Virus record (IMG/VR): IMGVR_UViG_3300044701_000569
Coordinates: 293,560-357,559 of that record
Length of the DNA: 64,000 nucleotides
Reading direction: 5' to 3' (one strand)
Positions 20,037 through 42,216 of this stretch are shown here, piece by piece. The translations under genes were made by a program, and so were the position numbers. Under the pieces are notes generated by a model. The model did no database searches and was not told where the DNA came from. It saw only the letters and a program-made list of their open reading frames with translations. Every line of letters starts with the position of its first letter. Within the stretch, counting starts at the first letter, position 1.

Positions 20037-20774
20037 TTAGTCCCAAAGTGCTTGATAATATTTTCCAAAAAGACGGAAGCCGTTAGTGATACGAGCTTGA
20101 TATTCCTTCATTCCGTCCCAGTCAGTCTCAGCAGTATGGTTTGGTCCGTCTACCATTTGATAAAGTTTGGCAGTACCATCGTCGTTCCACTCAACTACTT
20201 TAGAACGGAGATCGTACTCTCCCTTGCGGAATTGATCTTCCCAGCTTTCATCAAGTTCGGATTCAAATGCAAAAATCATCTGATCCATAACCCAATCCCA
20301 ACGTTTGAAATGATTAGTATCAGTGTCCCATTCGTTTTCTTTTGGAGGAGCACTGGTAGAGCGTAGCTCTTCAGGCACGTCTTCGTCATCAACAAAAGGT
20401 GCGCCGTGCTTAGATGCCTTTAGCTGTTTAAGCATAGGCAGTGCAATAAGAGCAAGAGTATGATCCATGCTCCAGGTATCGTAACGATCAATACGAATCT
20501 TTATCTTGCGCTCACGCTTGCTTTCAACCCACTTTAAAAATTTGTAAAGCCAAGTTTCTGAACGATCATCGCTCCAGCGGTCCACATCAGGATTATCTTT
20601 GGTGGGTCTTGGTACTACATTACCGTGAGCTAACCACTCACCAAAATCATGCACCCAGTTAGGCTTGCTTTCAATGCCAAACTCGTCTTTTACAGGCTTC
20701 GCCCAAAAGCAGAGCAGCTCTGCTAGCTGGTAGGGTCCAAACCAATTCTTGTAGGGTCCAATATAGACTTTCAT
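20037..20774 (-). CDS. conserved hypothetical phage protein
   Basis: IRIDRYDTWSMDHTLA...GFRLFGKYYQALWD. Confidence 0.8.
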   Translation of the reverse strand: MKVYIGPYKNWFGPYQLAELLCFWAKPVKDEFGIESKPNWVHDFGEWLAHGNVVPRPTKDNPDVDRWSDDRSETWLYKFLKWVESKRERKIKIRIDRYDTWSMDHTLALIALPMLKQLKASKHGAPFVDDEDVPEELRSTSAPPKENEWDTDTNHFKRWDWVMDQMIFAFESELDESWEDQFRKGEYDLRSKVVEWNDDGTAKLYQMVDGPNHTAETDWDGMKEYQARITNGFRLFGKYYQALWD

Positions 20775-21121
20775 TTTTCCACCTTTGTATTTCGTTTATC
20801 TCTAAAGAGTTTAACATCCTTCATTGCACTTGTCAAGGCCGTAGCATAATTTAAAGCCTGTTGTTCACTCATGCAAATGGTGGTTTCGTGTTCCAAATAT
20901 CCTTTTGTAAGTAGATTCCAAAACTGTCGCCAGCGAGTTATACTCCAAAAAGGACTTTTCACTGTAACGTGTATGTTTACACTAACACCAGTGTCGTCAG
21001 CTTCTACCCAAAGATGATGTGTATGGTCAGGTTGTCCGCAGCCGCAAACAACATCATAAACTTTTGAGTCTCCCCAATCGTTTACTATTAAAATGCCTTC
21101 TGCTGGTTTTTGTATCTTCAT
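20771..21121 (-). CDS. hypothetical protein (CxC-H motif)
   Basis: VCGCGQPDHTH. Confidence 0.7.
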   Translation of the reverse strand: MKIQKPAEGILIVNDWGDSKVYDVVCGCGQPDHTHHLWVEADDTGVSVNIHVTVKSPFWSITRWRQFWNLLTKGYLEHETTICMSEQQALNYATALTSAMKDVKLFRDKRNTKVEK

Positions 21122-28740: not shown

Positions 28741-28776
28741 AAAGTATTTATGAAGAAAAAGATTCTAAAAAGGTTT

Positions 28777-35359: not shown

Positions 35360-36055
35360 TTATACTATTTTAGGGAACAGCATGTCTGTACAAAACAGAT
35401 CCACTTCTGCTTCGTTAAGCCCTAGACTTTTCATTACATTAGGTGTATGGGGGTTTTGACGCTGATTGTCACAGTACCAGTTCTGTGCCTTAACAGTATC
35501 TTCTAAGGCTGCTGAATCAGCATAGTCACTGATCTCGTCAAAATAGGCTCGTAGGTTATTAAGTGCTATGTTTATAATTGCTACAGCTTCTTCTTCTGTG
35601 TTGACATTTCCAGCAGCCAACATCTTATCTGTAAAAATATTCTTAGCCCACTGTGGCAGTTCTCTCTGCTTCTTAGGTATAAAATCTTCTACACTATCCT
35701 TGTAGCCTAGAATCATAGGATGATTCGCGCCACCACTCGAAGGACTAAAATCGTGAAACGCACCTGTTATCTTATTCTTACCAGCAATAACATCAAAGCC
35801 GTAGATAGGTCCGCCGTTGGTAAGGCTAGGAAACACACAGACGTGCATCATCCAAAGACCTTTGCTTTCTCTAGCATCTACAACATCAATATGAGCCCTA
35901 CGCACATGTAGATTAGCCCATACACGATTAACCCAGCCCCCGTCGCTCTTATTAAATTGCGACATTCCCGGTTCGTTAATTTCAACTGCGTGTTCTTCAA
36001 ATATCTTGATAATCTCGTCTTTGCAATCAATTAGCTTTTCCCAAATTACACTCAC
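35360..36055 (-). CDS. ferredoxin-dependent bilin reductase, PcyX/PcyA-like
   Basis: RRAHIDVVD, MMHVCVFP, PIYGFDVIAG, RELPQWA..IF, YCDNQRQNPHT; next to heme oxygenase. Confidence 0.88.
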   Translation of the reverse strand: MSVIWEKLIDCKDEIIKIFEEHAVEINEPGMSQFNKSDGGWVNRVWANLHVRRAHIDVVDARESKGLWMMHVCVFPSLTNGGPIYGFDVIAGKNKITGAFHDFSPSSGGANHPMILGYKDSVEDFIPKKQRELPQWAKNIFTDKMLAAGNVNTEEEAVAIINIALNNLRAYFDEISDYADSAALEDTVKAQNWYCDNQRQNPHTPNVMKSLGLNEAEVDLFCTDMLFPKIV

Positions 36056-36585
36056 TCTTTAATCTCCGACATCTGTTGGAATAACTTAGTTGCAAAGTCA
36101 AAACAAATCTTAGCTTCTTCAGCCATGCTATCGTTTAGTCTAGCACGTATTCTTTCTTTCAGTTCTTCAACTGGTTCATTGAATTGATACATCTTTCCTG
36201 AACCCGGTACTCGCTTTGCTAACATCTGTCCACCACTCAAGTCGCCCATATGTCGAACATAAATGTGTGCCATTAACTTGTCCGGATCATCCTGTATCTT
36301 AACTAGATGATCCATGTATTCTTTTACTACGGGCAGCAACGGTGGTTGCTTATTAGTATCTGTCCATAGTTCTTGATAATCTTCGTGTATTGCAGGAGCA
36401 CGTCTTACATCAAGTATACCGTGTACCATTGCAAATACTTCTAGAAGATTATACTGAGGGTGCTGATTAAAAAGGAACGTTGCATAACGTTCCTTTGATA
36501 GGTTACTAGAAAACATCTCACGGACAAATTCTTGCCGTTCAGCAGCTTTATGATGTTCCCAAGTTAGTTCTTTTAAGTTGCTCAT
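36052..36585 (-). CDS. biliverdin-producing heme oxygenase
   Basis: LKELTWEHHKAAE, AHIYVRHMGDLSGGQ, EEAKICF. Confidence 0.92.
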   Translation of the reverse strand: MSNLKELTWEHHKAAERQEFVREMFSSNLSKERYATFLFNQHPQYNLLEVFAMVHGILDVRRAPAIHEDYQELWTDTNKQPPLLPVVKEYMDHLVKIQDDPDKLMAHIYVRHMGDLSGGQMLAKRVPGSGKMYQFNEPVEELKERIRARLNDSMAEEAKICFDFATKLFQQMSEIKE

Positions 36586-36599
36586 ATTATTATATAGCG

Positions 36600-36911
36600 T
36601 TACTCTTGTTCTACTTTCACTTGAAGTGGAAATCCGTGATTCCTACTTGCAGTAATTGTTTCAGCACTCTTCTGTTCTGCTATTTCAAAAAAGTATGTAC
36701 CCACTACAGCTTTACCTTCTGTATGTATGGTCATTGTAATGTGTTCAGCACTTTTCTCAGAATGCTTGTAAATCTGTTTTAGAATTTCTACTACCCAATT
36801 CATTGGGGTAATTTCGTCATTGAACATAATAACATTAAACTTTTTAGGTTCAACTGTCTGCTTCTTAATCTTTTCGTCAATTTTAATATCGATATCTGTT
36901 GCTATACTCAT
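36600..36911 (-). CDS. clpS: N-end rule adaptor ClpS
   Basis: VIMFNDEITPMNWV, IHTEGKAVVG, FPLQVKVE. Confidence 0.92.
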   Translation of the reverse strand: MSIATDIDIKIDEKIKKQTVEPKKFNVIMFNDEITPMNWVVEILKQIYKHSEKSAEHITMTIHTEGKAVVGTYFFEIAEQKSAETITASRNHGFPLQVKVEQE

Positions 36912-36927
36912 TTTGTTCTCCTGGTAA

Positions 36928-36948
36928 GGTGGGGGGATTTCTCCCCCC
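36928..36948. terminator. GC hairpin after hsp20
   Basis: ggggga-tttc-tccccc; no clear U-tract. Confidence 0.45.
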
Positions 36949-36957
36949 TAGACTAGA

Positions 36958-37422
36958 TTACTCGCTGTCTATTGTTAATGCTTCAGCTTTTGAAGGTGCT
37001 GTAATAGCAATCTTCTTAGGCTGTAGCTCTTCTGGTACACGGCGCTTGAGATGAATGTTTAACATTCCTAGCTCAAGTGTTGCACCATCCACTTCAACGT
37101 GGTCGGCGAGAGTGAACTCTCTACGGAAATTGCGTCCGCCGATTCCCTTGTGTAGATATGTCACACTGTCATCTCCTTTTGGAGAAATCCCTTCAATACG
37201 AAGAACATTCTTGTCCTTTGTAATTTCCAAGTTATCCATAGCAAAGCCAGCCACGGCAACGCTGATAATATACTCGTCGTCGTTTAGCTGTACAATATTA
37301 TATGGAGGGTATCCACCGCTTGAATTAGCTGAGTACTGTCGTTCAATTTCGTTAAACAGTCTATCAAAACCAATTGTGGCTCTGTGGAATGAAGGTAAGT
37401 CTAGAGTTGTAAGTCTTGTCAT
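36958..37422 (-). CDS. small heat shock protein Hsp20 (IbpA-like)
   Basis: IGFDRLF, YPPYNI, AVAGF, YLHKGI..RNF.REFTLA. Confidence 0.95.
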   Translation of the reverse strand: MTRLTTLDLPSFHRATIGFDRLFNEIERQYSANSSGGYPPYNIVQLNDDEYIISVAVAGFAMDNLEITKDKNVLRIEGISPKGDDSVTYLHKGIGGRNFRREFTLADHVEVDGATLELGMLNIHLKRRVPEELQPKKIAITAPSKAEALTIDSE

Positions 37423-37476
37423 GTTTTTCTCCTTTAATAAGCAAGAACTTTATAATGAGCCCTAACGGCGCTCATT
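37423..37476 (-). ncRNA. ROSE-like RNA thermometer in the hsp20 leader
   Basis: 5' hairpin plus UUCUUGCU-uauuaa-AGGAGAA pairing the SD with a bulged G. Confidence 0.7.
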
Positions 37477-37477
37477 T

Positions 37478-38587
37478 TTATTTACCAATTGTAGATGACT
37501 CAAAAACACTGTTATGAGTTTGAGTACAGCGTACAAAGGTAGTGCATTTGCTAAGTTGCTTCAGCGTCTTAGCGCCTGCGTATGTACAGGTACTGCGCAA
37601 TCCGCCCAGTATATCCTGCACAGTATTTAGTACCGCTCCTTTGTAGGGTACTAAAACAGTACGGCCTTCTGAAGACCTGTAGTCCTTCAGTCCGCCAAAA
37701 TGTTTGTTGTTGGCACTTTCTGAACTCATACCGTAAAACTGTACAAATTTCTTTTCTTGAATTTTACGTTTACGAGCTGTTAGATGGTCTCCAACTTCGT
37801 ATTCTAATTCATTAGTTTCGTAAAACTTAGAGATAACTTCGCCCCCGCCTTCGTCGTGTCCTGCCAGCATACCACCAAGCATTACAAAGTCGGCACCGGC
37901 AGCAAATGCTTTAGCAACATCACCAGGACAAGTGCATCCACCATCAGCAATAATATGACCGCCCAGACCGTGAGCTGCGTCGGCACATTCAATAACTGCA
38001 CTAAGTTGTGGGTACCCAACGCCAGTCTGGATACGAGTAGTACAGACACTACCAGGACCAATACCAACTTTAACAATATCTGCACCTCGCAGTATTAACT
38101 CCTGTGTCATGTCACCAGTAACAACGTTGCCGGCAATAATTGTATGTAGTGGAAATTCTTTACGAATCTTTGAAACATAGTCAGCAAAGTGTTCGCTATA
38201 ACCGTTAGCAATGTCAATACAGATAAACTTAATATCAGTAAAGTGGGCGCATAAGTCAACTAACTTATCAAAGTCGGCAGCACCTGTTCCGGTAGAAATA
38301 GCAAGATGATTACCGCTAAATGGATAACCCTTACTCCAATCATTATAGTCGTAGTTTTTAACTAAACATGTAAACATTTTATGCTTTGCTAATGCATCAG
38401 CTATAGCAAATGTACCAACACCATCCATGTTAGCGGCCATAATAGGTATGCCAGTCCATGTTTGTTCACTGTGCTTGAACGTATATGTGCGCTCAAGGGT
38501 TACTTCTTTACGACTAGATAGAGTTGACCGCTTAGGACGAATTAATACGTCCTTGTAATCAAGTTTAACGTCTTGATCGATTCTCAT
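37478..38587 (-). CDS. guaC: GMP reductase
   Basis: [44 protein letters not shown]. Confidence 0.95.
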
Positions 38588-38841
38588 TACTTCCTCTTAT
38601 TTGAGTATGGATTGGGGAAATTATCTTCATTTCTTGCCTGCTTTTTAAGCCATCTTGATCTAGCAGCAGCCTTGGCCTTCTTACGTCTTATACTGGGCTT
38701 TTCGTAAAATTCTTTTTCTCTGAGTTCTTGAAGAATTCCAGAATCTTGTACCTTCTTCTTGAATCTTCTAATGGCTCCATTAATGTCTCCATTACGGACT
38801 TCAACTACAAGTCCTCTAAACTCATCATTCACCTTCTTCAC
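38587..38841 (-). CDS. rpsU: 30S ribosomal protein bS21
   Basis: [25 protein letters not shown]. Confidence 0.92.
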
Positions 38842-39229
38842 TGATACCTCCTAGAGCTGATGAAAGAATACTGATGTTGTATATTCTGTTGCTACTTATA
38901 TGATTATAAACAGAGTCTACAGCATTTGTCAACCAATAAGTTTTTGGTTTGGCAATCATAAAACTGAGTAAGTCTTTTATATAAGGTGGACATTGGTCTA
39001 CGTCCACTATAACAATCTGACAAAGATTAAACACAGACAATAACCAATCTATATCGGCAGAAGCATACTGTTGCTTATCATAAAGATATACATTGATGCT
39101 TTCTTTTGTGTTTGGAAAGACTTCATTTTGTATTTGTTGTTGTAAATCTGCACTAGGAAAAATCACTAGCACACCAACAGCATCACTGAATACCTTGTCA
39201 GGCGGTGTAATTAAATTAATGTTTGTCAC
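38825..39229 (-). CDS. hypothetical protein
   Basis: 134 aa, LITPPD N-terminus. Confidence 0.75.
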   Translation of the reverse strand: MTNINLITPPDKVFSDAVGVLVIFPSADLQQQIQNEVFPNTKESINVYLYDKQQYASADIDWLLSVFNLCQIVIVDVDQCPPYIKDLLSFMIAKPKTYWLTNAVDSVYNHISSNRIYNISILSSALGGISEEGE

Positions 39230-41562: not shown

Positions 41563-41620
41563 ATTTCCTTATAACCTTTTTAGGTTTATCATAATGTATG
41601 TATATTTATGATATGCAGAT

Positions 41621-41647
41621 AAAAAGAAAGGCGCCCTAGAGCGCCTT
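41621..41647 (-). terminator. intrinsic terminator ending the tmRNA transcript
   Basis: AAGGCGC-tctagg-GCGCCTT then TCTTTTT. Confidence 0.75.
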
Positions 41648-41999
41648 CCTCACTGTTCTGTTGCCCGGTAAGTGAACCGCGAACCTGCTGTTTCTTAGGC
41701 AGCTAGCGCAAAGTTGTTGTCATTGACAGCAACGTTTACGAATAGTTCAGGAGTAAAGGTTTTTGTGCCGTTTACTTGATTTTGCTTCTTTTACGGAGAT
41801 CGCCTACCGTGTTGCCGTCTCTACTATCTCACCCAATCGATCCTAGTTCAGCCCCATCATAAAAGGACAATTAGCATGACAGTTACAATGACTGTAAATC
41901 CTACTAAAAATCTTACTAGATCGTCTTCCATAACTATCCTTTTATGGTGGAGCTGGCGGGAGTTGCACCCGCGTCTTGAATGCCTTCGCTTTGAAGGGA
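41648..41999 (-). ncRNA. ssrA: circularly permuted (two-piece) tmRNA
   Basis: Acceptor piece ...GCGGGTGCAACTCCCGCCAGCTCCACCA ends at 41945 and precedes the coding piece, which starts GGGGCTG at 41855. G3:U70 pair present. Tag frame ends NDNNFALAA-TAA at 41695. Outer ends approximate. Confidence 0.92.
41857..41931 (-). CDS. putative 24-aa TM peptide inside the tmRNA intervening segment
   Basis: AAGGA SD, ATG, MEDDLVRFLVGFTVIVTVMLIVLL, TGA. Confidence 0.5.
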   Translation of the reverse strand: MEDDLVRFLVGFTVIVTVMLIVLL

Positions 42000-42012
42000 T
42001 TACAACAATTTC

Positions 42013-42216
42013 TTAAACAGGCTGAATGTTACTTGCCTGTTGTCCTTTTGGACCCATTGTGATTTCAAATCTTACACTCTGTCCTTCTTGTAGGCTTTTG
42101 TAGCCACTAGAAGAAATTTGTGAAAAATGAGCAAACACATCTGCGCCGCCATTGTCTGGAGTAATGAAACCAAAACCTTTAGCTTCGTTAAACCATTTTA
42201 CTTTACCTGTTACCAT
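42013..42216 (-). CDS. cspA: cold-shock protein
   Basis: GKVKWFN, KGFGFI (RNP1), VFAHFS (RNP2). Confidence 0.96.

What the first reader, a model, noticed from the sequence alone, without database searches (positions are those of the whole stretch)
37423..37484. ROSE-like RNA thermometer on phage hsp20, behind a late promoter
Seen: TAAATA (37479-37484, overlapping the guaC stop), hairpin AUGAGC..GCUCAU, then UUCUU(G)CU-uauuaa-AGGAGAA. Known: ROSE elements in alpha/gamma-proteobacterial sHsp mRNAs use U(U/C)GCU pairing to the SD with a bulged G. Inference: temperature-gated chaperone supply during virion assembly.
Basis: partly seen in the sequence, partly recalled or inferred. Interest (0 to 1): 0.6.

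Follow-up and report, generated by a model that had tools for sequence, protein, structure and literature searches.

The report
ROSE-like leader on phage hsp20
The 55 bases ahead of this giant phage's small heat-shock gene are a short two-hairpin RNA leader of the bacterial "ROSE" thermometer type. The same leader sits ahead of chaperone genes in well over a hundred related aquatic T4-like phages, apparently undescribed, and its temperature response is inferred rather than shown.

Summary
It comprises a TAAATA box (37484-37479), hairpin I (37476-37454), UUCUU[G]CUU (37447-39), loop AUUA, AAGGAGAA (37434-27) and the AUG (37422).

Taken alone, this sequence is not beyond chance. The motif occurs twice in the window against 1.3 expected. 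Rfam's best hit is ROSE_3 at 16.4 bits against a threshold of 43. ViennaRNA prefers a different fold.

The comparative evidence decides the matter.
- 142 distinct hsp20 leaders from uncultured relatives, cyanophages, pelagiphages and phage Melnitz share the same two hairpins.
- 125 of the 142 carry U(U/C)GCU facing the Shine-Dalgarno sequence across a single unpaired G.
- The remaining 17 carry changed arms that still pair.
- Hairpin I covaries at all six pairs.
- A model built from these leaders hits the 357-kb genome once.
- Everywhere else it hits only leaders of hsp20, groES, groEL and dnaK, plus chromosomal hsp20 and rpoH-like genes in Alphaproteobacteria.

The late-promoter reading is plausible. 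TAAATA boxes are depleted overall, strand-specific and sit just upstream of genes, and the genome has a gp55 homologue. No transcription start site has been mapped.

Verdict: a new, phage-borne member of the short ROSE-like leaders. Thermosensing is inferred.

The parts
37479..37484 (-). TAAATA box, a T4-late-promoter-like -10 element in the context GGTAAATA. Its last two bases overlap the guaC-like stop codon.
   Evidence: Sequence read directly. TAAATA is present in 54 of 54 distinct leaders of the window's clade, and usually ends within about 5 nt of the base of hairpin I, or 30-45 nt away when an extra 5' hairpin intervenes. Window-wide, the box is depleted, strand-biased and enriched upstream of ORFs. 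The genome has a gp55 homologue.
37454..37476 (-). Hairpin I: AAUGAGC[G]CC, loop GUUA, GGGCUCAUU. It has 7 + 2 pairs with a conserved unpaired G37469. It probably lies at or within a few nucleotides of the 5' end of the transcript.
   Evidence: Predicted as the minimum-energy fold. All 6 modelled pairs show compensatory double changes across 80 and 97 leaders. RNAalifold recovers its outer 4 pairs. The N[G]CC-loop-GGN core matches hairpin I of the ROSE_3 consensus.
37439..37447 (-). Anti-Shine-Dalgarno arm UUCUU[G]CUU. The ROSE motif UUGCU is 37444-37440 and the unpaired G is 37442.
   Evidence: U(U/C)GCU is present in 125 of 142 distinct hsp20 leaders. CTTGCT is invariant in the window's clade. 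The arms pair better with their own partner than with swapped partners.
37435..37438 (-). Loop AUUA of the terminal hairpin.
   Evidence: Among relatives this stretch is A/U-rich and varies in sequence and length, as a loop would.
37427..37434 (-). 3' arm AAGGAGAA, containing the Shine-Dalgarno GGAG (37432-37429). It lies 6 nt upstream of the AUG.
   Evidence: Sequence read directly. Eight pairs form with 37447-37439 around the bulged G37442. Predicted free energy of the isolated hairpin is -4.4 kcal/mol at 20 C and -1.8 at 37 C.
36958..37422 (-). hsp20 (IbpA-like small heat-shock protein, 154 aa), the regulated gene. The AUG is at 37422-37420.
   Evidence: Pfam HSP20, 4.6e-14. There are 6277 homologues, some named 'molecular chaperone IbpA' by their source. 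It is 44.8% identical to the IbpA-type ORF in locus L087, whose leader is Rfam ROSE_2.
37411..37450 (-). Alternative, mutually exclusive helix. AAGU-CUUG-UUAU (37450-37437) pairs with AUGA-CAAG-ACUU (37422-37411), burying the AUG and codons 2-4 and leaving the Shine-Dalgarno sequence in a 14-nt loop.
   Evidence: This is the ViennaRNA minimum-energy fold, with probability 0.95 at 20 C. ACAAGA is invariant in 54 of 54 distinct clade sequences. Only 1.2% of synonymous variants bury the AUG as well. However, covariation is not significant, and the pairing is absent outside this clade.
37478..38587 (-). Upstream guaC-like gene (GMP reductase/IMPDH family), whose stop codon abuts the element.
   Evidence: Pfam IMPDH, 6.5e-69. 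Phage homologues are annotated as GMP reductase. A metatranscriptome contig bridges this gene and hsp20.
36931..36948 (-). 3' hairpin GGGGGGA-GAAA-UCCCCCC, directly after the hsp20 stop codon and 19 nt before clpS. There is no U-tract. It may bound or stabilise the hsp20 mRNA.
   Evidence: Sequence read directly. The simple scan did not call it a terminator. Not followed up.

Best explanation
The segment 37476-37420 (minus strand) is the 5' leader of the phage's hsp20 mRNA. It belongs to the short, two-hairpin ROSE-like class of translational thermosensors known from bacterial ibpA/hsp genes.

Proposed mechanism, with shown and inferred steps marked:
1. A gp55-type late promoter (TAAATA, 37484-37479) starts transcription about 6-7 nt downstream, at the foot of hairpin I. 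This step is inferred.
2. Hairpin I is a stable, covarying, G+C-rich stem with a conserved bulged G. It caps the 5' end and acts as a folding and stability scaffold. The structure is shown by covariation. The role is inferred from Pseudomonas ibpA.
3. The weak terminal hairpin pairs UUCUU[G]CUU with AAGGAGAA, burying the Shine-Dalgarno sequence at low temperature. Complementarity and conservation are shown.
4. Warming, or any condition that melts this roughly -3 to -5 kcal/mol helix, frees the ribosome-binding site and raises Hsp20 synthesis. This step is inferred.

In the window's own clade the same UCUUG can instead pair with codons 2-3 (CAAGA), burying the AUG. This may add to or replace Shine-Dalgarno occlusion.

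The leader was most likely inherited together with an ibpA-like gene from an AT-rich alphaproteobacterial-type host and rewired to a phage promoter. In related phages it has spread to groES, groEL and dnaK.
For: Context:
- The downstream gene is a true small heat-shock protein.

Conservation:
- 142 distinct hsp20 leaders were collected from the window's uncultured clade, from cyanophages (S-PM2, P-SSM2, ACG-2014g types), from the pelagiphage HTVC008M type and from phage Melnitz. All show box, hairpin I, spacer, anti-SD, A/U loop, AGGAG and AUG, although their first codons differ.
- 125 of 142 carry U(U/C)GCU. Thirteen carry AGAC[G]CU facing AG-GUCU, and four carry AACU[G]UCU facing GGA-GGUU. 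HTVC008M-like leaders carry CUUU[G]CU facing AGGAGG. The arms change together.

Covariation:
- In an arm-swap test, own partners form 7.26 pairs against 5.50 for swapped partners, with 0 of 2000 permutations as high.
- For the whole structure, 89.9-92.3% of cells pair against about 81% in shuffles. The covariation score is 0.32-0.35 against 0.16 in shuffles (0 of 500 as high) and 0.02-0.12 for slid controls.

Specificity of covariance model R1:
- One hit in the 357-kb genome (53.1 bits, E = 8e-12).
- One hit in each of five related 155-275 kb contigs, always at hsp20.
- All 97 hits in 372 kb of loci lie ahead of hsp20, groES, groEL or an ibpB-type gene.
- An exact-pattern scan of IMG/VR returned 79 loci: 76 sHsp and 3 dnaK.

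Link to known ROSE elements:
- Melnitz's leader matches ROSE_3 at 34.1 bits, E = 3.5e-4.
- ROSE_3 is also the top Rfam hit for the window.
- R1 hits an E. coli-type ibpB leader and chromosomal hsp20 and rpoH-like leaders in a sample of Alphaproteobacteria.

Energetics:
- The window's isolated terminal hairpin has a predicted free energy of -4.4 kcal/mol at 20 C and -2.8 at 30 C.
- The ROSE_2-matching ibpA-type terminal hairpin in L087 has -5.2 at 30 C and -3.1 at 42 C. The two have similar stability about 10-15 C apart.

Published behaviour of the class: two hairpins, UYGCU paired with the Shine-Dalgarno sequence, hairpin II alone sufficient, and deletion of the G locking it shut (PMC3669281).
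Against: - No experiment bears on temperature.
- The window's leader scores 16.4 bits against ROSE_3's gathering score of 43. Only 1 of 15 further phage leaders gave any ROSE hit, at 25.4 bits.
- ViennaRNA does not predict the Shine-Dalgarno helix in this sequence. Its probability is 0.04 at 20 C, against 0.95 for the coding helix.
- By that model the hsp20 translation-initiation region is not unusually closed among the window's genes (rank 33 of 36 when ordered from most to least closed).
- RNAalifold on 97 leaders recovers only hairpin I.
- Within the Shine-Dalgarno helix, only 2 of 7 modelled pairs show double changes. Most of the support is conservation, which a protein-binding site would also produce.
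- The covariance model, and the alignments used for the counts, were built from the same leaders, so the counts are partly circular.
- Both candidate helices have predicted melting points near 50 C, well above lake or ocean temperatures.
- The one RNA-library contig crosses the putative start site without a break.
Confidence: 0.68

Rival explanations
1. In this clade the working repressor is a different hairpin. The leader segment AAGU-CUUG-UUAU (37450-37437) pairs with AUGA-CAAG-ACUU (37422-37411). This buries the start codon and codons 2-4, while the Shine-Dalgarno sequence sits exposed in a 14-nt loop. The element would still be a melting-type translational control, but not a ROSE-type Shine-Dalgarno occlusion.
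For: - It is the minimum-energy and dominant ensemble structure. In the window sequence its probability is 0.95 at 20 C and 0.80 at 37 C. The clade mean is 0.55, against 0.20 for the Shine-Dalgarno helix.
- Its predicted free energy is -8.6 kcal/mol at 20 C, against -5.3 for the Shine-Dalgarno hairpin within the full-length leader, the value directly comparable to the -8.6.
- ACAAGA (codons 2-3) is invariant in 54 of 54 distinct clade sequences, whereas codons 4-10 vary synonymously. ACA and AGA make up only 44% and 33% of Thr and Arg codons in the window.
- Only 1.2% of codon-usage-weighted synonymous variants bury the AUG as well as the native sequence.
Against: - The pairing is not conserved outside this clade. 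Cyanophage, HTVC008M, Melnitz, groES and dnaK leaders keep UYGCU and the Shine-Dalgarno sequence but have other first codons.
- The formal count is not significant: 92.9% of cells pair against 91.5% in shuffles (40 of 500 as high). The five core pairs never vary, and only one pair shows U-A changing to A-U.
- A-rich second and third codons are favoured for reasons unrelated to pairing.
- Nearest-neighbour energy rules do not model the non-canonical pairs known in ROSE helices.
Confidence: 0.17
2. The leader is a constitutive expression cassette with no sensing role. A 5' stem-loop protects the mRNA from 5'-end-dependent decay, and a strong AGGAG with an A-rich spacer drives high translation. 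The conserved UYGCU would be a relic carried along with the ibpA-like gene, or the binding site of a protein. Candidates are a RegA-type translational repressor, CsrA, or a DNA-level Pho box as annotated for S-PM2.
For: - Hairpin I is the only part with strong covariation, and the only part RNAalifold finds.
- The Shine-Dalgarno helix is weak and supported mostly by conservation.
- In S-PM2, regA lies directly upstream of hsp20.
- A published S-PM2d study listed the stretch containing ACTCGCTT as a putative Pho box of an hsp20 that is P-regulated (PMC10976474).
- 5' stem-loops are known to stabilise ibpA mRNA (PMC3669281).
Against: - The arms change together in several lineages (AGAC/GUCU, AACUUU/GAGGUU, ACUC/GAGU), which a fixed protein site would not require.
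- The motif, the bulged G and its spacing from the Shine-Dalgarno sequence are exactly those of validated thermometers.
- The cassette is found only on chaperone genes, not on other highly expressed late genes of the same genomes.
Confidence: 0.12
3. Nothing functional is present. Hairpin I would be the transcription terminator of guaC, and the anti-SD/SD complementarity and the TAAATA box would be chance matches in A+T-rich intergenic DNA.
For: - In the single sequence the motif count is at chance level (2 observed against 1.3 expected).
- TAAATA occurs 41 times in the window.
- The hairpin directly follows the guaC stop codon.
Against: - The whole module travels with hsp20 whatever gene lies upstream: guaC, groEL, regA, purL or others.
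- No U-tract follows hairpin I, and the terminator scan does not call it.
- The covariance model hits this site at E = 8e-12, and it is the only hit in the genome.
Confidence: 0.03

Closest known systems
Short ROSE-like RNA thermometers of Pseudomonas ibpA (Rfam ROSE_3, RF02523; Krajewski et al. 2013, PMC3669281)
   Same: - Both are 5' UTRs of about 55-62 nt ahead of an IbpA-type small heat-shock gene, with exactly two hairpins.
- Hairpin I is G+C-rich with the core N[G]CC-loop-GGN.
- Hairpin II pairs U(U/C)GCU with the Shine-Dalgarno sequence across one unpaired G.
- ROSE_3 is the best Rfam match for the window, and a significant one for phage Melnitz's leader (34.1 bits, E = 3.5e-4).
   Different: - The phage leader scores below the family's gathering threshold (16.4-34.1 bits against 43).
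- Its hairpin II is A/U-closed. It lacks the flanking G-C clamps reported as important in Pseudomonas, and is predicted to be weaker (about -1.8 kcal/mol at 37 C for the isolated hairpin).
- In this clade the AUG can be paired, whereas it is unpaired in Pseudomonas.
- It sits behind a phage TAAATA box rather than a sigma-32 promoter.
- It lies in a virus.
E. coli/Salmonella ibpA and ibpB ROSE-like thermometers (Rfam ROSE_2, RF01832)
   Same: - The gene family is the same: the window's Hsp20 is 44.8% identical to the IbpA-type ORF in L087.
- Both have CUCGCU/CUUGCU facing AGGAG across a bulged G.
- The phage-derived model R1 hits the ibpB-type leader in L087 at 26.7 bits, E = 2e-4.
   Different: - The enterobacterial ibpA element has three hairpins and a longer terminal stem (CUC[G]CUGA/UCAGGAG plus outer pairs). 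Its predicted free energy is -4.0 kcal/mol at 37 C.
- ROSE_2 gives no hit on the window.
Classical ROSE elements of Alphaproteobacteria (Rfam ROSE, RF00435; Bradyrhizobium hspA and rpoH)
   Same: - They share the U(U/C)GCU motif, the bulged G and the heat-shock gene context.
- R1 finds related short leaders on chromosomal hsp20 genes, and on one rpoH-like gene, in a sample of 151 genomes of the class holding an 'Alphaproteobacteria' MAG. The best is L342 at 47.9 bits on a contig longer than 404 kb.
   Different: - Classical ROSE elements have four hairpins and are about 100 nt long.
- Rfam's model does not hit the window.
- The aquatic alphaproteobacterial leaders found here are themselves below Rfam's thresholds.
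Phage RNA thermometers reported so far (lambda cIII; SPbeta blyA fourU; a sigma-70 fourU in a gut Caudoviricetes), as listed in Robo-Therm 2024, PMC11182007
   Same: All are cis-acting mRNA structures in a phage genome that are proposed to gate translation by temperature.
   Different: - Those are fourU or bespoke structures on lysis/lysogeny or sigma-factor genes, each known from a single phage or a few phages.
- This one is ROSE-type, sits on chaperone genes, and is conserved across a large group of lytic aquatic T4-like phages.
- Seven full-text searches found no paper describing it.
T4 late promoters (TATAAATA, gp55/gp33-dependent)
   Same: - An A/T box with no -35 element lies immediately upstream of the leader.
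- All seven ATAAATA copies in the window lie on the coding strand and within 41 nt upstream of an ORF start, against 19 copies expected by chance.
- The genome has homologues of gp55 and gp23, and the window has an RIIA homologue.
   Different: - The box here is GGTAAATA. It matches 6 of the 8 positions of T4's TATAAATA and 7 of the 8 of the clade's usual GATAAATA.
- The ATAAATA boxes in the window also precede non-structural genes such as nrdA and an endonuclease.
- About a third of cyanophage-type leaders have TATAAT instead.
- No start site is mapped.

Membership tests
ROSE-like RNA thermometers | Lies in the 5' untranslated region of a small heat-shock (or other heat-shock) gene | tested here: met
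   The element ends at the AUG of a Pfam HSP20 protein (4.6e-14). In relatives it lies only ahead of hsp20, groES, groEL or dnaK.
ROSE-like RNA thermometers | Conserved U(U/C)GCU anti-Shine-Dalgarno motif | tested here: met
   UUGCU lies at 37444-37440. The motif is present in 125 of 142 distinct hsp20 leaders, and the rest carry ACGCU or CUGUCU with matching changes in the 3' arm.
ROSE-like RNA thermometers | A single unpaired (bulged) G within the motif, opposite the Shine-Dalgarno sequence | tested here: met
   G37442 has no partner when UUCUU-CUU pairs with AAGGAGAA. All but 4 of the 142 parsed helices have the arrangement C/U-[G]-C/U, and the G column is invariant in alignment A3.
ROSE-like RNA thermometers | [quoted passage not shown] | tested here: inconclusive
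   Hairpin I is met: all 6 pairs covary. The terminal helix is supported by complementarity (89-90% of cells paired), by 2 of 7 pairs with double changes, and by the arm-swap test (0 of 2000). It is not predicted by ViennaRNA for this sequence or by RNAalifold.
ROSE-like RNA thermometers | Score at or above the curated Rfam gathering threshold (ROSE, ROSE_2 or ROSE_3) | tested here: not met
   Window: ROSE_3, 16.4 bits against 43, E = 0.49. The best phage relative is Melnitz at 34.1 bits. Only 1 of 15 further leaders gave any hit, at 25.4 bits.
ROSE-like RNA thermometers | Translation rises with temperature through melting of the Shine-Dalgarno hairpin | not testable with these tools
   Only computed free energies are available. 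The isolated terminal hairpin has -4.4 kcal/mol at 20 C, -2.8 at 30 C and -1.8 at 37 C.
T4-type late promoter | TATAAATA-like -10 box without a -35 element, upstream of the gene | tested here: inconclusive
   The box is GGTAAATA, matching 6 of the 8 positions of TATAAATA. TAAATA is conserved in 54 of 54 clade leaders. Of the coding-strand TAAATA copies, 17 of 31 lie within 70 nt upstream of an ORF, a zone covering 10.6% of the sequence. A weak sigma-70-like match also lies just upstream.
T4-type late promoter | The genome encodes the late sigma factor gp55 | tested here: met
   A gp55 homologue lies at G000:C1:125400-125747 (E = 2.1e-11, 27% identity to S-PM2 gp55). A gp23-like capsid protein is also present.
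T4-type late promoter | Transcript 5' end about 6-7 nt downstream of the box, appearing late in infection | not testable with these tools
   Only assembled contigs of one freshwater metatranscriptome were available. One 819-nt contig spans 37106-37924 without a break.
Intrinsic terminator (of guaC) | G+C-rich stem followed directly by a U-tract | tested here: not met
   Hairpin I is followed by UAUAAAGUU, and the terminator scan does not call it. The hairpin also travels with hsp20 when other genes lie upstream.
fourU RNA thermometers | Four consecutive U residues pairing with AGGA of the Shine-Dalgarno sequence | tested here: not met
   The anti-SD arm is UUCUUGCUU, with no run of four U residues facing the Shine-Dalgarno sequence.

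The most novel reading that the evidence does not exclude
The element may be more than one captured bacterial leader. It may be the common translational switch of a virus-encoded heat-shock regulon. Aquatic T4-like phages (cyanophages, pelagiphages, methylophages and freshwater/marine jumbo relatives) would place one short ROSE-type thermosensor, weakened to suit cool water, on every chaperone gene they carry (hsp20, groES, groEL, dnaK) and drive it from their own promoters. That would make it by far the most widespread viral RNA thermometer. It would also explain the regulation of hsp20, a core cyanomyovirus gene. Part of this leader has been read as a Pho box in S-PM2.
Probability: 0.45. Interest if true: 0.75.

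Novelty: new member of a known kind. Interest (0 to 1): 0.6.

Why it matters
hsp20 is a core gene of T4-like cyanophages, and its regulation and role are unknown. A 2024 paper held in the library (PMC11182007) counts only about three RNA thermometers in phages.

If this leader senses temperature, it has several consequences:
- A single, easily testable RNA device would link water temperature directly to chaperone supply inside infected cells of some of the most abundant phage-host systems in lakes and oceans.
- It would give a ready explanation for temperature effects on phage productivity.
- It would provide naturally low-temperature-tuned ROSE variants for RNA biophysics and synthetic biology.
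- It would flag a subfamily that current Rfam ROSE models miss, in phages and in AT-rich Alphaproteobacteria alike.

Tried and rejected
- Rfam at gathering thresholds over the whole window found only the phage tmRNA.
- Nucleotide search of cultured phages found only distant guaC matches. The protein search found no cultured phage above 48% identity.
- The hairpin I finder first written here failed because it allowed no bulge, and a later version had a faulty pattern. Both were replaced.
- Single-protein locus searches with S-PM2 and HTVC008M Hsp20 reached only close relatives. An alignment query was used instead.
- Doron et al. 2016 (PMC5029184), wanted for the expression class of cyanophage hsp20, is not held.
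- The genome-contig scan found no cellular host copy of the exact pattern. It found phage-like contigs inside MAGs, one probable chance hit ahead of a hisG-like gene, and three unrelated hairpins.
- The terminator reading of hairpin I was rejected, as was the fourU class.
- RNAalifold did not recover the Shine-Dalgarno helix.
- The coding-helix rival gained no covariation support.
- The own genome has no groEL or groES, so the regulon idea cannot be examined in this phage.
- The RNA-library contigs cannot show transcript ends, and DNA carry-over cannot be excluded.
Full report
**What is in the window.**
All genes in this region lie on the minus strand.
- A guaC-like gene (37478-38587; Pfam IMPDH/GMP reductase, 6.5e-69) is followed by a 55-nt gap.
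- Next comes a 154-aa small heat-shock protein (36958-37422; Pfam HSP20, 4.6e-14).
- Downstream are clpS, a heme oxygenase and a bilin reductase. Upstream are ribosomal protein S21 and a permuted tmRNA.

Read as RNA, the gap contains the following:
- TAAATA (37484-37479), whose last two bases are the first two of the guaC-like stop codon.
- A hairpin of 7 + 2 pairs with an unpaired G37469 (37476-37454).
- A 6-nt spacer.
- UUCUU[G]CUU (37447-37439), the loop AUUA, AAGGAGAA (37434-27), a spacer AAAAAC, and the AUG (37422).

The window is part of a 357.5-kb IMG/VR virus record. That record encodes homologues of T4 gp55 and gp23, and the window encodes an RIIA homologue. It is a distant T4-like jumbo phage. 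A freshwater metatranscriptome holds 42% of the sampled 31-base words of the 3-kb stretch searched (window 36000-39000).

**The single sequence proves little.**
- TYGCT-N2-10-AGGAG occurs twice in the window against 1.3 expected in shuffles.
- Rfam gives nothing at gathering thresholds. With permissive settings its best match is ROSE_3, but at 16.4 bits against a threshold of 43 (E = 0.49).
- ViennaRNA folds hairpin I as described. It then pairs AAGU-CUUG-UUAU with AUGA-CAAG-ACUU, burying the AUG and leaving the Shine-Dalgarno sequence in a loop.
- By this model the hsp20 ribosome-binding region is not unusually closed among 36 genes of the window.

**Comparison settles what it is.**
I collected 80 loci with close Hsp20 relatives, the hsp20 regions of cultured phages, and about 110 more loci from pelagiphage-type and cyanophage-type clades. 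This gave 142 distinct leaders.

All share one plan: an A/T box, a hairpin with the core N[G]CC-loop-GGN, a short A-rich spacer, C-U-(U/C)-G-C-U-U, an A/U loop, AGGAG and the AUG. The plan persists whatever gene lies upstream (guaC, groEL, regA, purL). It also persists although the first codons differ between clades. The conserved partner of the UYGCU box is therefore the Shine-Dalgarno sequence and not the coding region.

- 125 of 142 leaders carry U(U/C)GCU.
- The remaining 17 are informative. Thirteen have AGAC[G]CU facing AG-GUCU, and four have AACU[G]UCU facing GGA-GGUU.
- HTVC008M-like leaders have (AA)CUUU[G]CU facing AGGAGG(UU), and some cyanophage leaders have ACUC facing GAGU.
- When the 5' and 3' arms of the 39 distinct arm combinations are exchanged, the helix drops from 7.26 to 5.50 pairs. 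None of 2000 random reassignments reaches the native value.

Formal pair counts come from a MAFFT alignment of 80 leaders and a model-based alignment of 97.
- 89.9% and 92.3% of cells pair, against about 81% in shuffles.
- Covariation scores are 0.32-0.35, against 0.16 in shuffles (0 of 500 as high) and 0.02-0.12 when the partners are slid.
- All six pairs of hairpin I show compensatory double changes.
- In the Shine-Dalgarno helix only two of seven pairs do. The pair next to the unpaired G alternates between C-G and U-G.

**Caveats on that evidence.**
- The model and alignments come from the same leaders.
- Related sequences inflate such counts.
- RNAalifold recovers only the outer four pairs of hairpin I.

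Hairpin I is established. The Shine-Dalgarno helix is well supported but not proven.

**Specificity.**
- Covariance model R1 finds one site in the 357-kb genome, this one (53.1 bits, E = 8e-12).
- It finds one site in each of five related 155-275 kb contigs, always at hsp20.
- In 372 kb of fetched loci, all 97 hits lie directly ahead of a start codon. Besides hsp20, seven are leaders of a 95-aa GroES or a 541-aa GroEL about 2 kb upstream of hsp20, complete with an ATAAATA box. One is the ibpB-type leader in locus L087.
- An exact-pattern scan of IMG/VR returned 79 loci: 76 sHsp genes and 3 dnaK.
- A scan of 185,579 species genomes returned phage-like contigs binned into MAGs. Two carry hsp20, including a 335-kb contig. 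Two carry dnaK behind GATAAATA.

The leader is thus a chaperone-gene leader and nothing else.

**Relation to known ROSE elements.**
- Melnitz's leader matches ROSE_3 at 34.1 bits (E = 3.5e-4). The alignment covers both hairpins, including the shared AU[G]CC...GGGU core of hairpin I.
- Locus L087 is filed as an unverified Campylobacter phage but carries an enterobacterial-type ibpAB region. It served as a positive control, matching ROSE_2 at 100 bits.
- R1 also finds short leaders on chromosomal hsp20 genes, and on one rpoH-like gene, in 9 of 151 genomes of the class that holds an 'Alphaproteobacteria' MAG. The best has the same UCUUGCUU-AGGAGA core as the window, on a contig longer than 404 kb.
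- These bacterial leaders, too, fall below Rfam's thresholds, as do 15 further phage leaders.
- By its defining features the element is ROSE-like, closest to the two-hairpin Pseudomonas ibpA type. In that type hairpin II alone confers thermoregulation, and removing the unpaired G locks it shut (PMC3669281).
- By Rfam score it is not a member of any curated ROSE family.

**Energetics.**

| Structure | Free energy (kcal/mol) |
|---|---|
| Window terminal hairpin, isolated | -4.4 at 20 C, -2.8 at 30 C, -1.8 at 37 C |
| Window Shine-Dalgarno hairpin, within the full-length leader | -5.3 at 20 C, -2.6 at 37 C |
| ROSE_2-matching ibpA-type terminal hairpin in L087 | -5.2 at 30 C, -3.1 at 42 C |
| Window-clade mean at 37 C | -0.9 |
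| Cyanophage-type mean at 37 C | -2.0 |
| Pelagiphage-type mean at 37 C | -2.9 |

The phage hairpin therefore has, about 10-15 C lower, the stability the bacterial one has across its working range. That fits tuning to cool water but is only an inference.

The competing helix with codons 2-4 is stronger, at -8.6 kcal/mol at 20 C. Its partner ACAAGA is invariant in the clade. Only 1.2% of synonymous variants bury the AUG as well. However, it has no significant covariation and no counterpart in other clades. I keep it as a clade-specific addition or rival.

**Promoter.**
- ATAAATA occurs 7 times in the window against 19 expected. All seven copies lie on the coding strand and within 41 nt upstream of an ORF start.
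- TAAATA occurs 41 times against 69 expected, with 31 copies on the coding strand by the script's count (30 in the search table). Seventeen of those lie within 70 nt upstream of an ORF, a zone that covers 10.6% of the sequence.
- Every leader of the window's clade has the box.
- Together with the gp55 homologue, this makes a T4-type late promoter the likeliest driver.

Four points limit that conclusion.
- The window's own box is the weaker GGTAAATA.
- The ATAAATA boxes in the window also precede nrdA and an endonuclease.
- A third of cyanophage-type leaders carry TATAAT instead.
- The only RNA evidence is an 819-nt metatranscriptome contig that runs unbroken from guaC into hsp20. That is compatible with read-through or with DNA carry-over.

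**Novelty.**
Seven full-text searches found no description of a ROSE-like element on phage hsp20. A 2024 paper counts about three phage RNA thermometers, none of them ROSE-type (PMC11182007). A 2024 S-PM2 study listed the stretch containing the anti-SD box as a putative Pho box (PMC10976474).

The mechanism class is well known. The phage setting, the breadth across aquatic T4-like phages and the spread to groES, groEL and dnaK appear to be new.

**Verdict.**
ROSE-like architecture is very likely (about 0.9) and a late-type promoter is likely. Temperature gating is inferred (about 0.6-0.7). The assembly-chaperone purpose is speculative.

Noticed in passing
L019:959-1012 (groES ORF 1010-1297); L018:1219-1270 (groEL ORF 1268-2893); also L008, L016, L033, L051, L064: Related phages carry groES-groEL directly upstream of hsp20. 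The groES or groEL gene has the same ATAAATA box and ROSE-like leader (R1 hits of 40-51 bits).
   Followed up: partly
L222, L256, L273 (IMG/VR); L205, L209 (contigs in 'Halobacteroidaceae' MAGs): A 633-aa DnaK gene is preceded by the same leader, often behind (G/C)ATAAATA. Phage-encoded Hsp70 would then share the hsp20 control element.
   Followed up: partly
window 41625-42070 (-): A permuted (two-piece) tmRNA gene is encoded by the phage (Rfam tmRNA_permuted 127 bits, beta_tmRNA 108 bits). An ATAAATA box lies at 41603-41609, just downstream of it and ahead of an endonuclease-like ORF.
   Followed up: no
window 35360-36911 and 38587-38841 (-): An unusual run of host-like genes surrounds hsp20: ClpS adaptor, heme oxygenase, ferredoxin-dependent bilin reductase and ribosomal protein S21. 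They sit in a jumbo phage whose sequence is held by a freshwater metatranscriptome.
   Followed up: no
window 36931-36948 (-): A perfect GGGGGGA-GAAA-UCCCCCC hairpin lies between the hsp20 stop codon and clpS. It has no U-tract. It may be a 3' stabiliser or processing site that bounds the hsp20 message.
   Followed up: no
window, whole: ATAAATA is strongly avoided (7 copies against 19 expected). All seven copies lie on the coding strand, 4-40 nt upstream of ORF starts. Some lie only 4-5 nt from the called start (for example 28745-28751), which suggests either very short leaders or mis-called starts.
   Followed up: partly
L084 / L330 (S-PM2, hsp20 at locus 20655-21065): The stretch published as a putative Pho box of S-PM2d hsp20 (PMC10976474) contains the anti-SD box ACTCGCTT of the ROSE-like leader. 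regA, a translational repressor gene, lies directly upstream of hsp20.
   Followed up: partly
L087 (MG065691.1, 'UNVERIFIED Campylobacter phage A11a'): This record carries an enterobacterial-type ibpA-ibpB region, with a ROSE_2 element at 100 bits. It probably includes host or contaminant DNA.
   Followed up: no
L206 / L339 (PBPT01000016.1, 335-kb contig in a 'Neomarinimicrobiota' MAG): A contig about as long as this jumbo phage's genome, carrying hsp20 and the same leader, is binned in a bacterial MAG. It is either a mis-binned phage or a hint at the host.
   Followed up: no
L350 (G091:C6:6491-6548): In one genome of the sampled Alphaproteobacteria class, the leader model hits just ahead of an rpoH-like sigma-factor gene. 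This fits the known ROSE control of rpoH in some Alphaproteobacteria.
   Followed up: no
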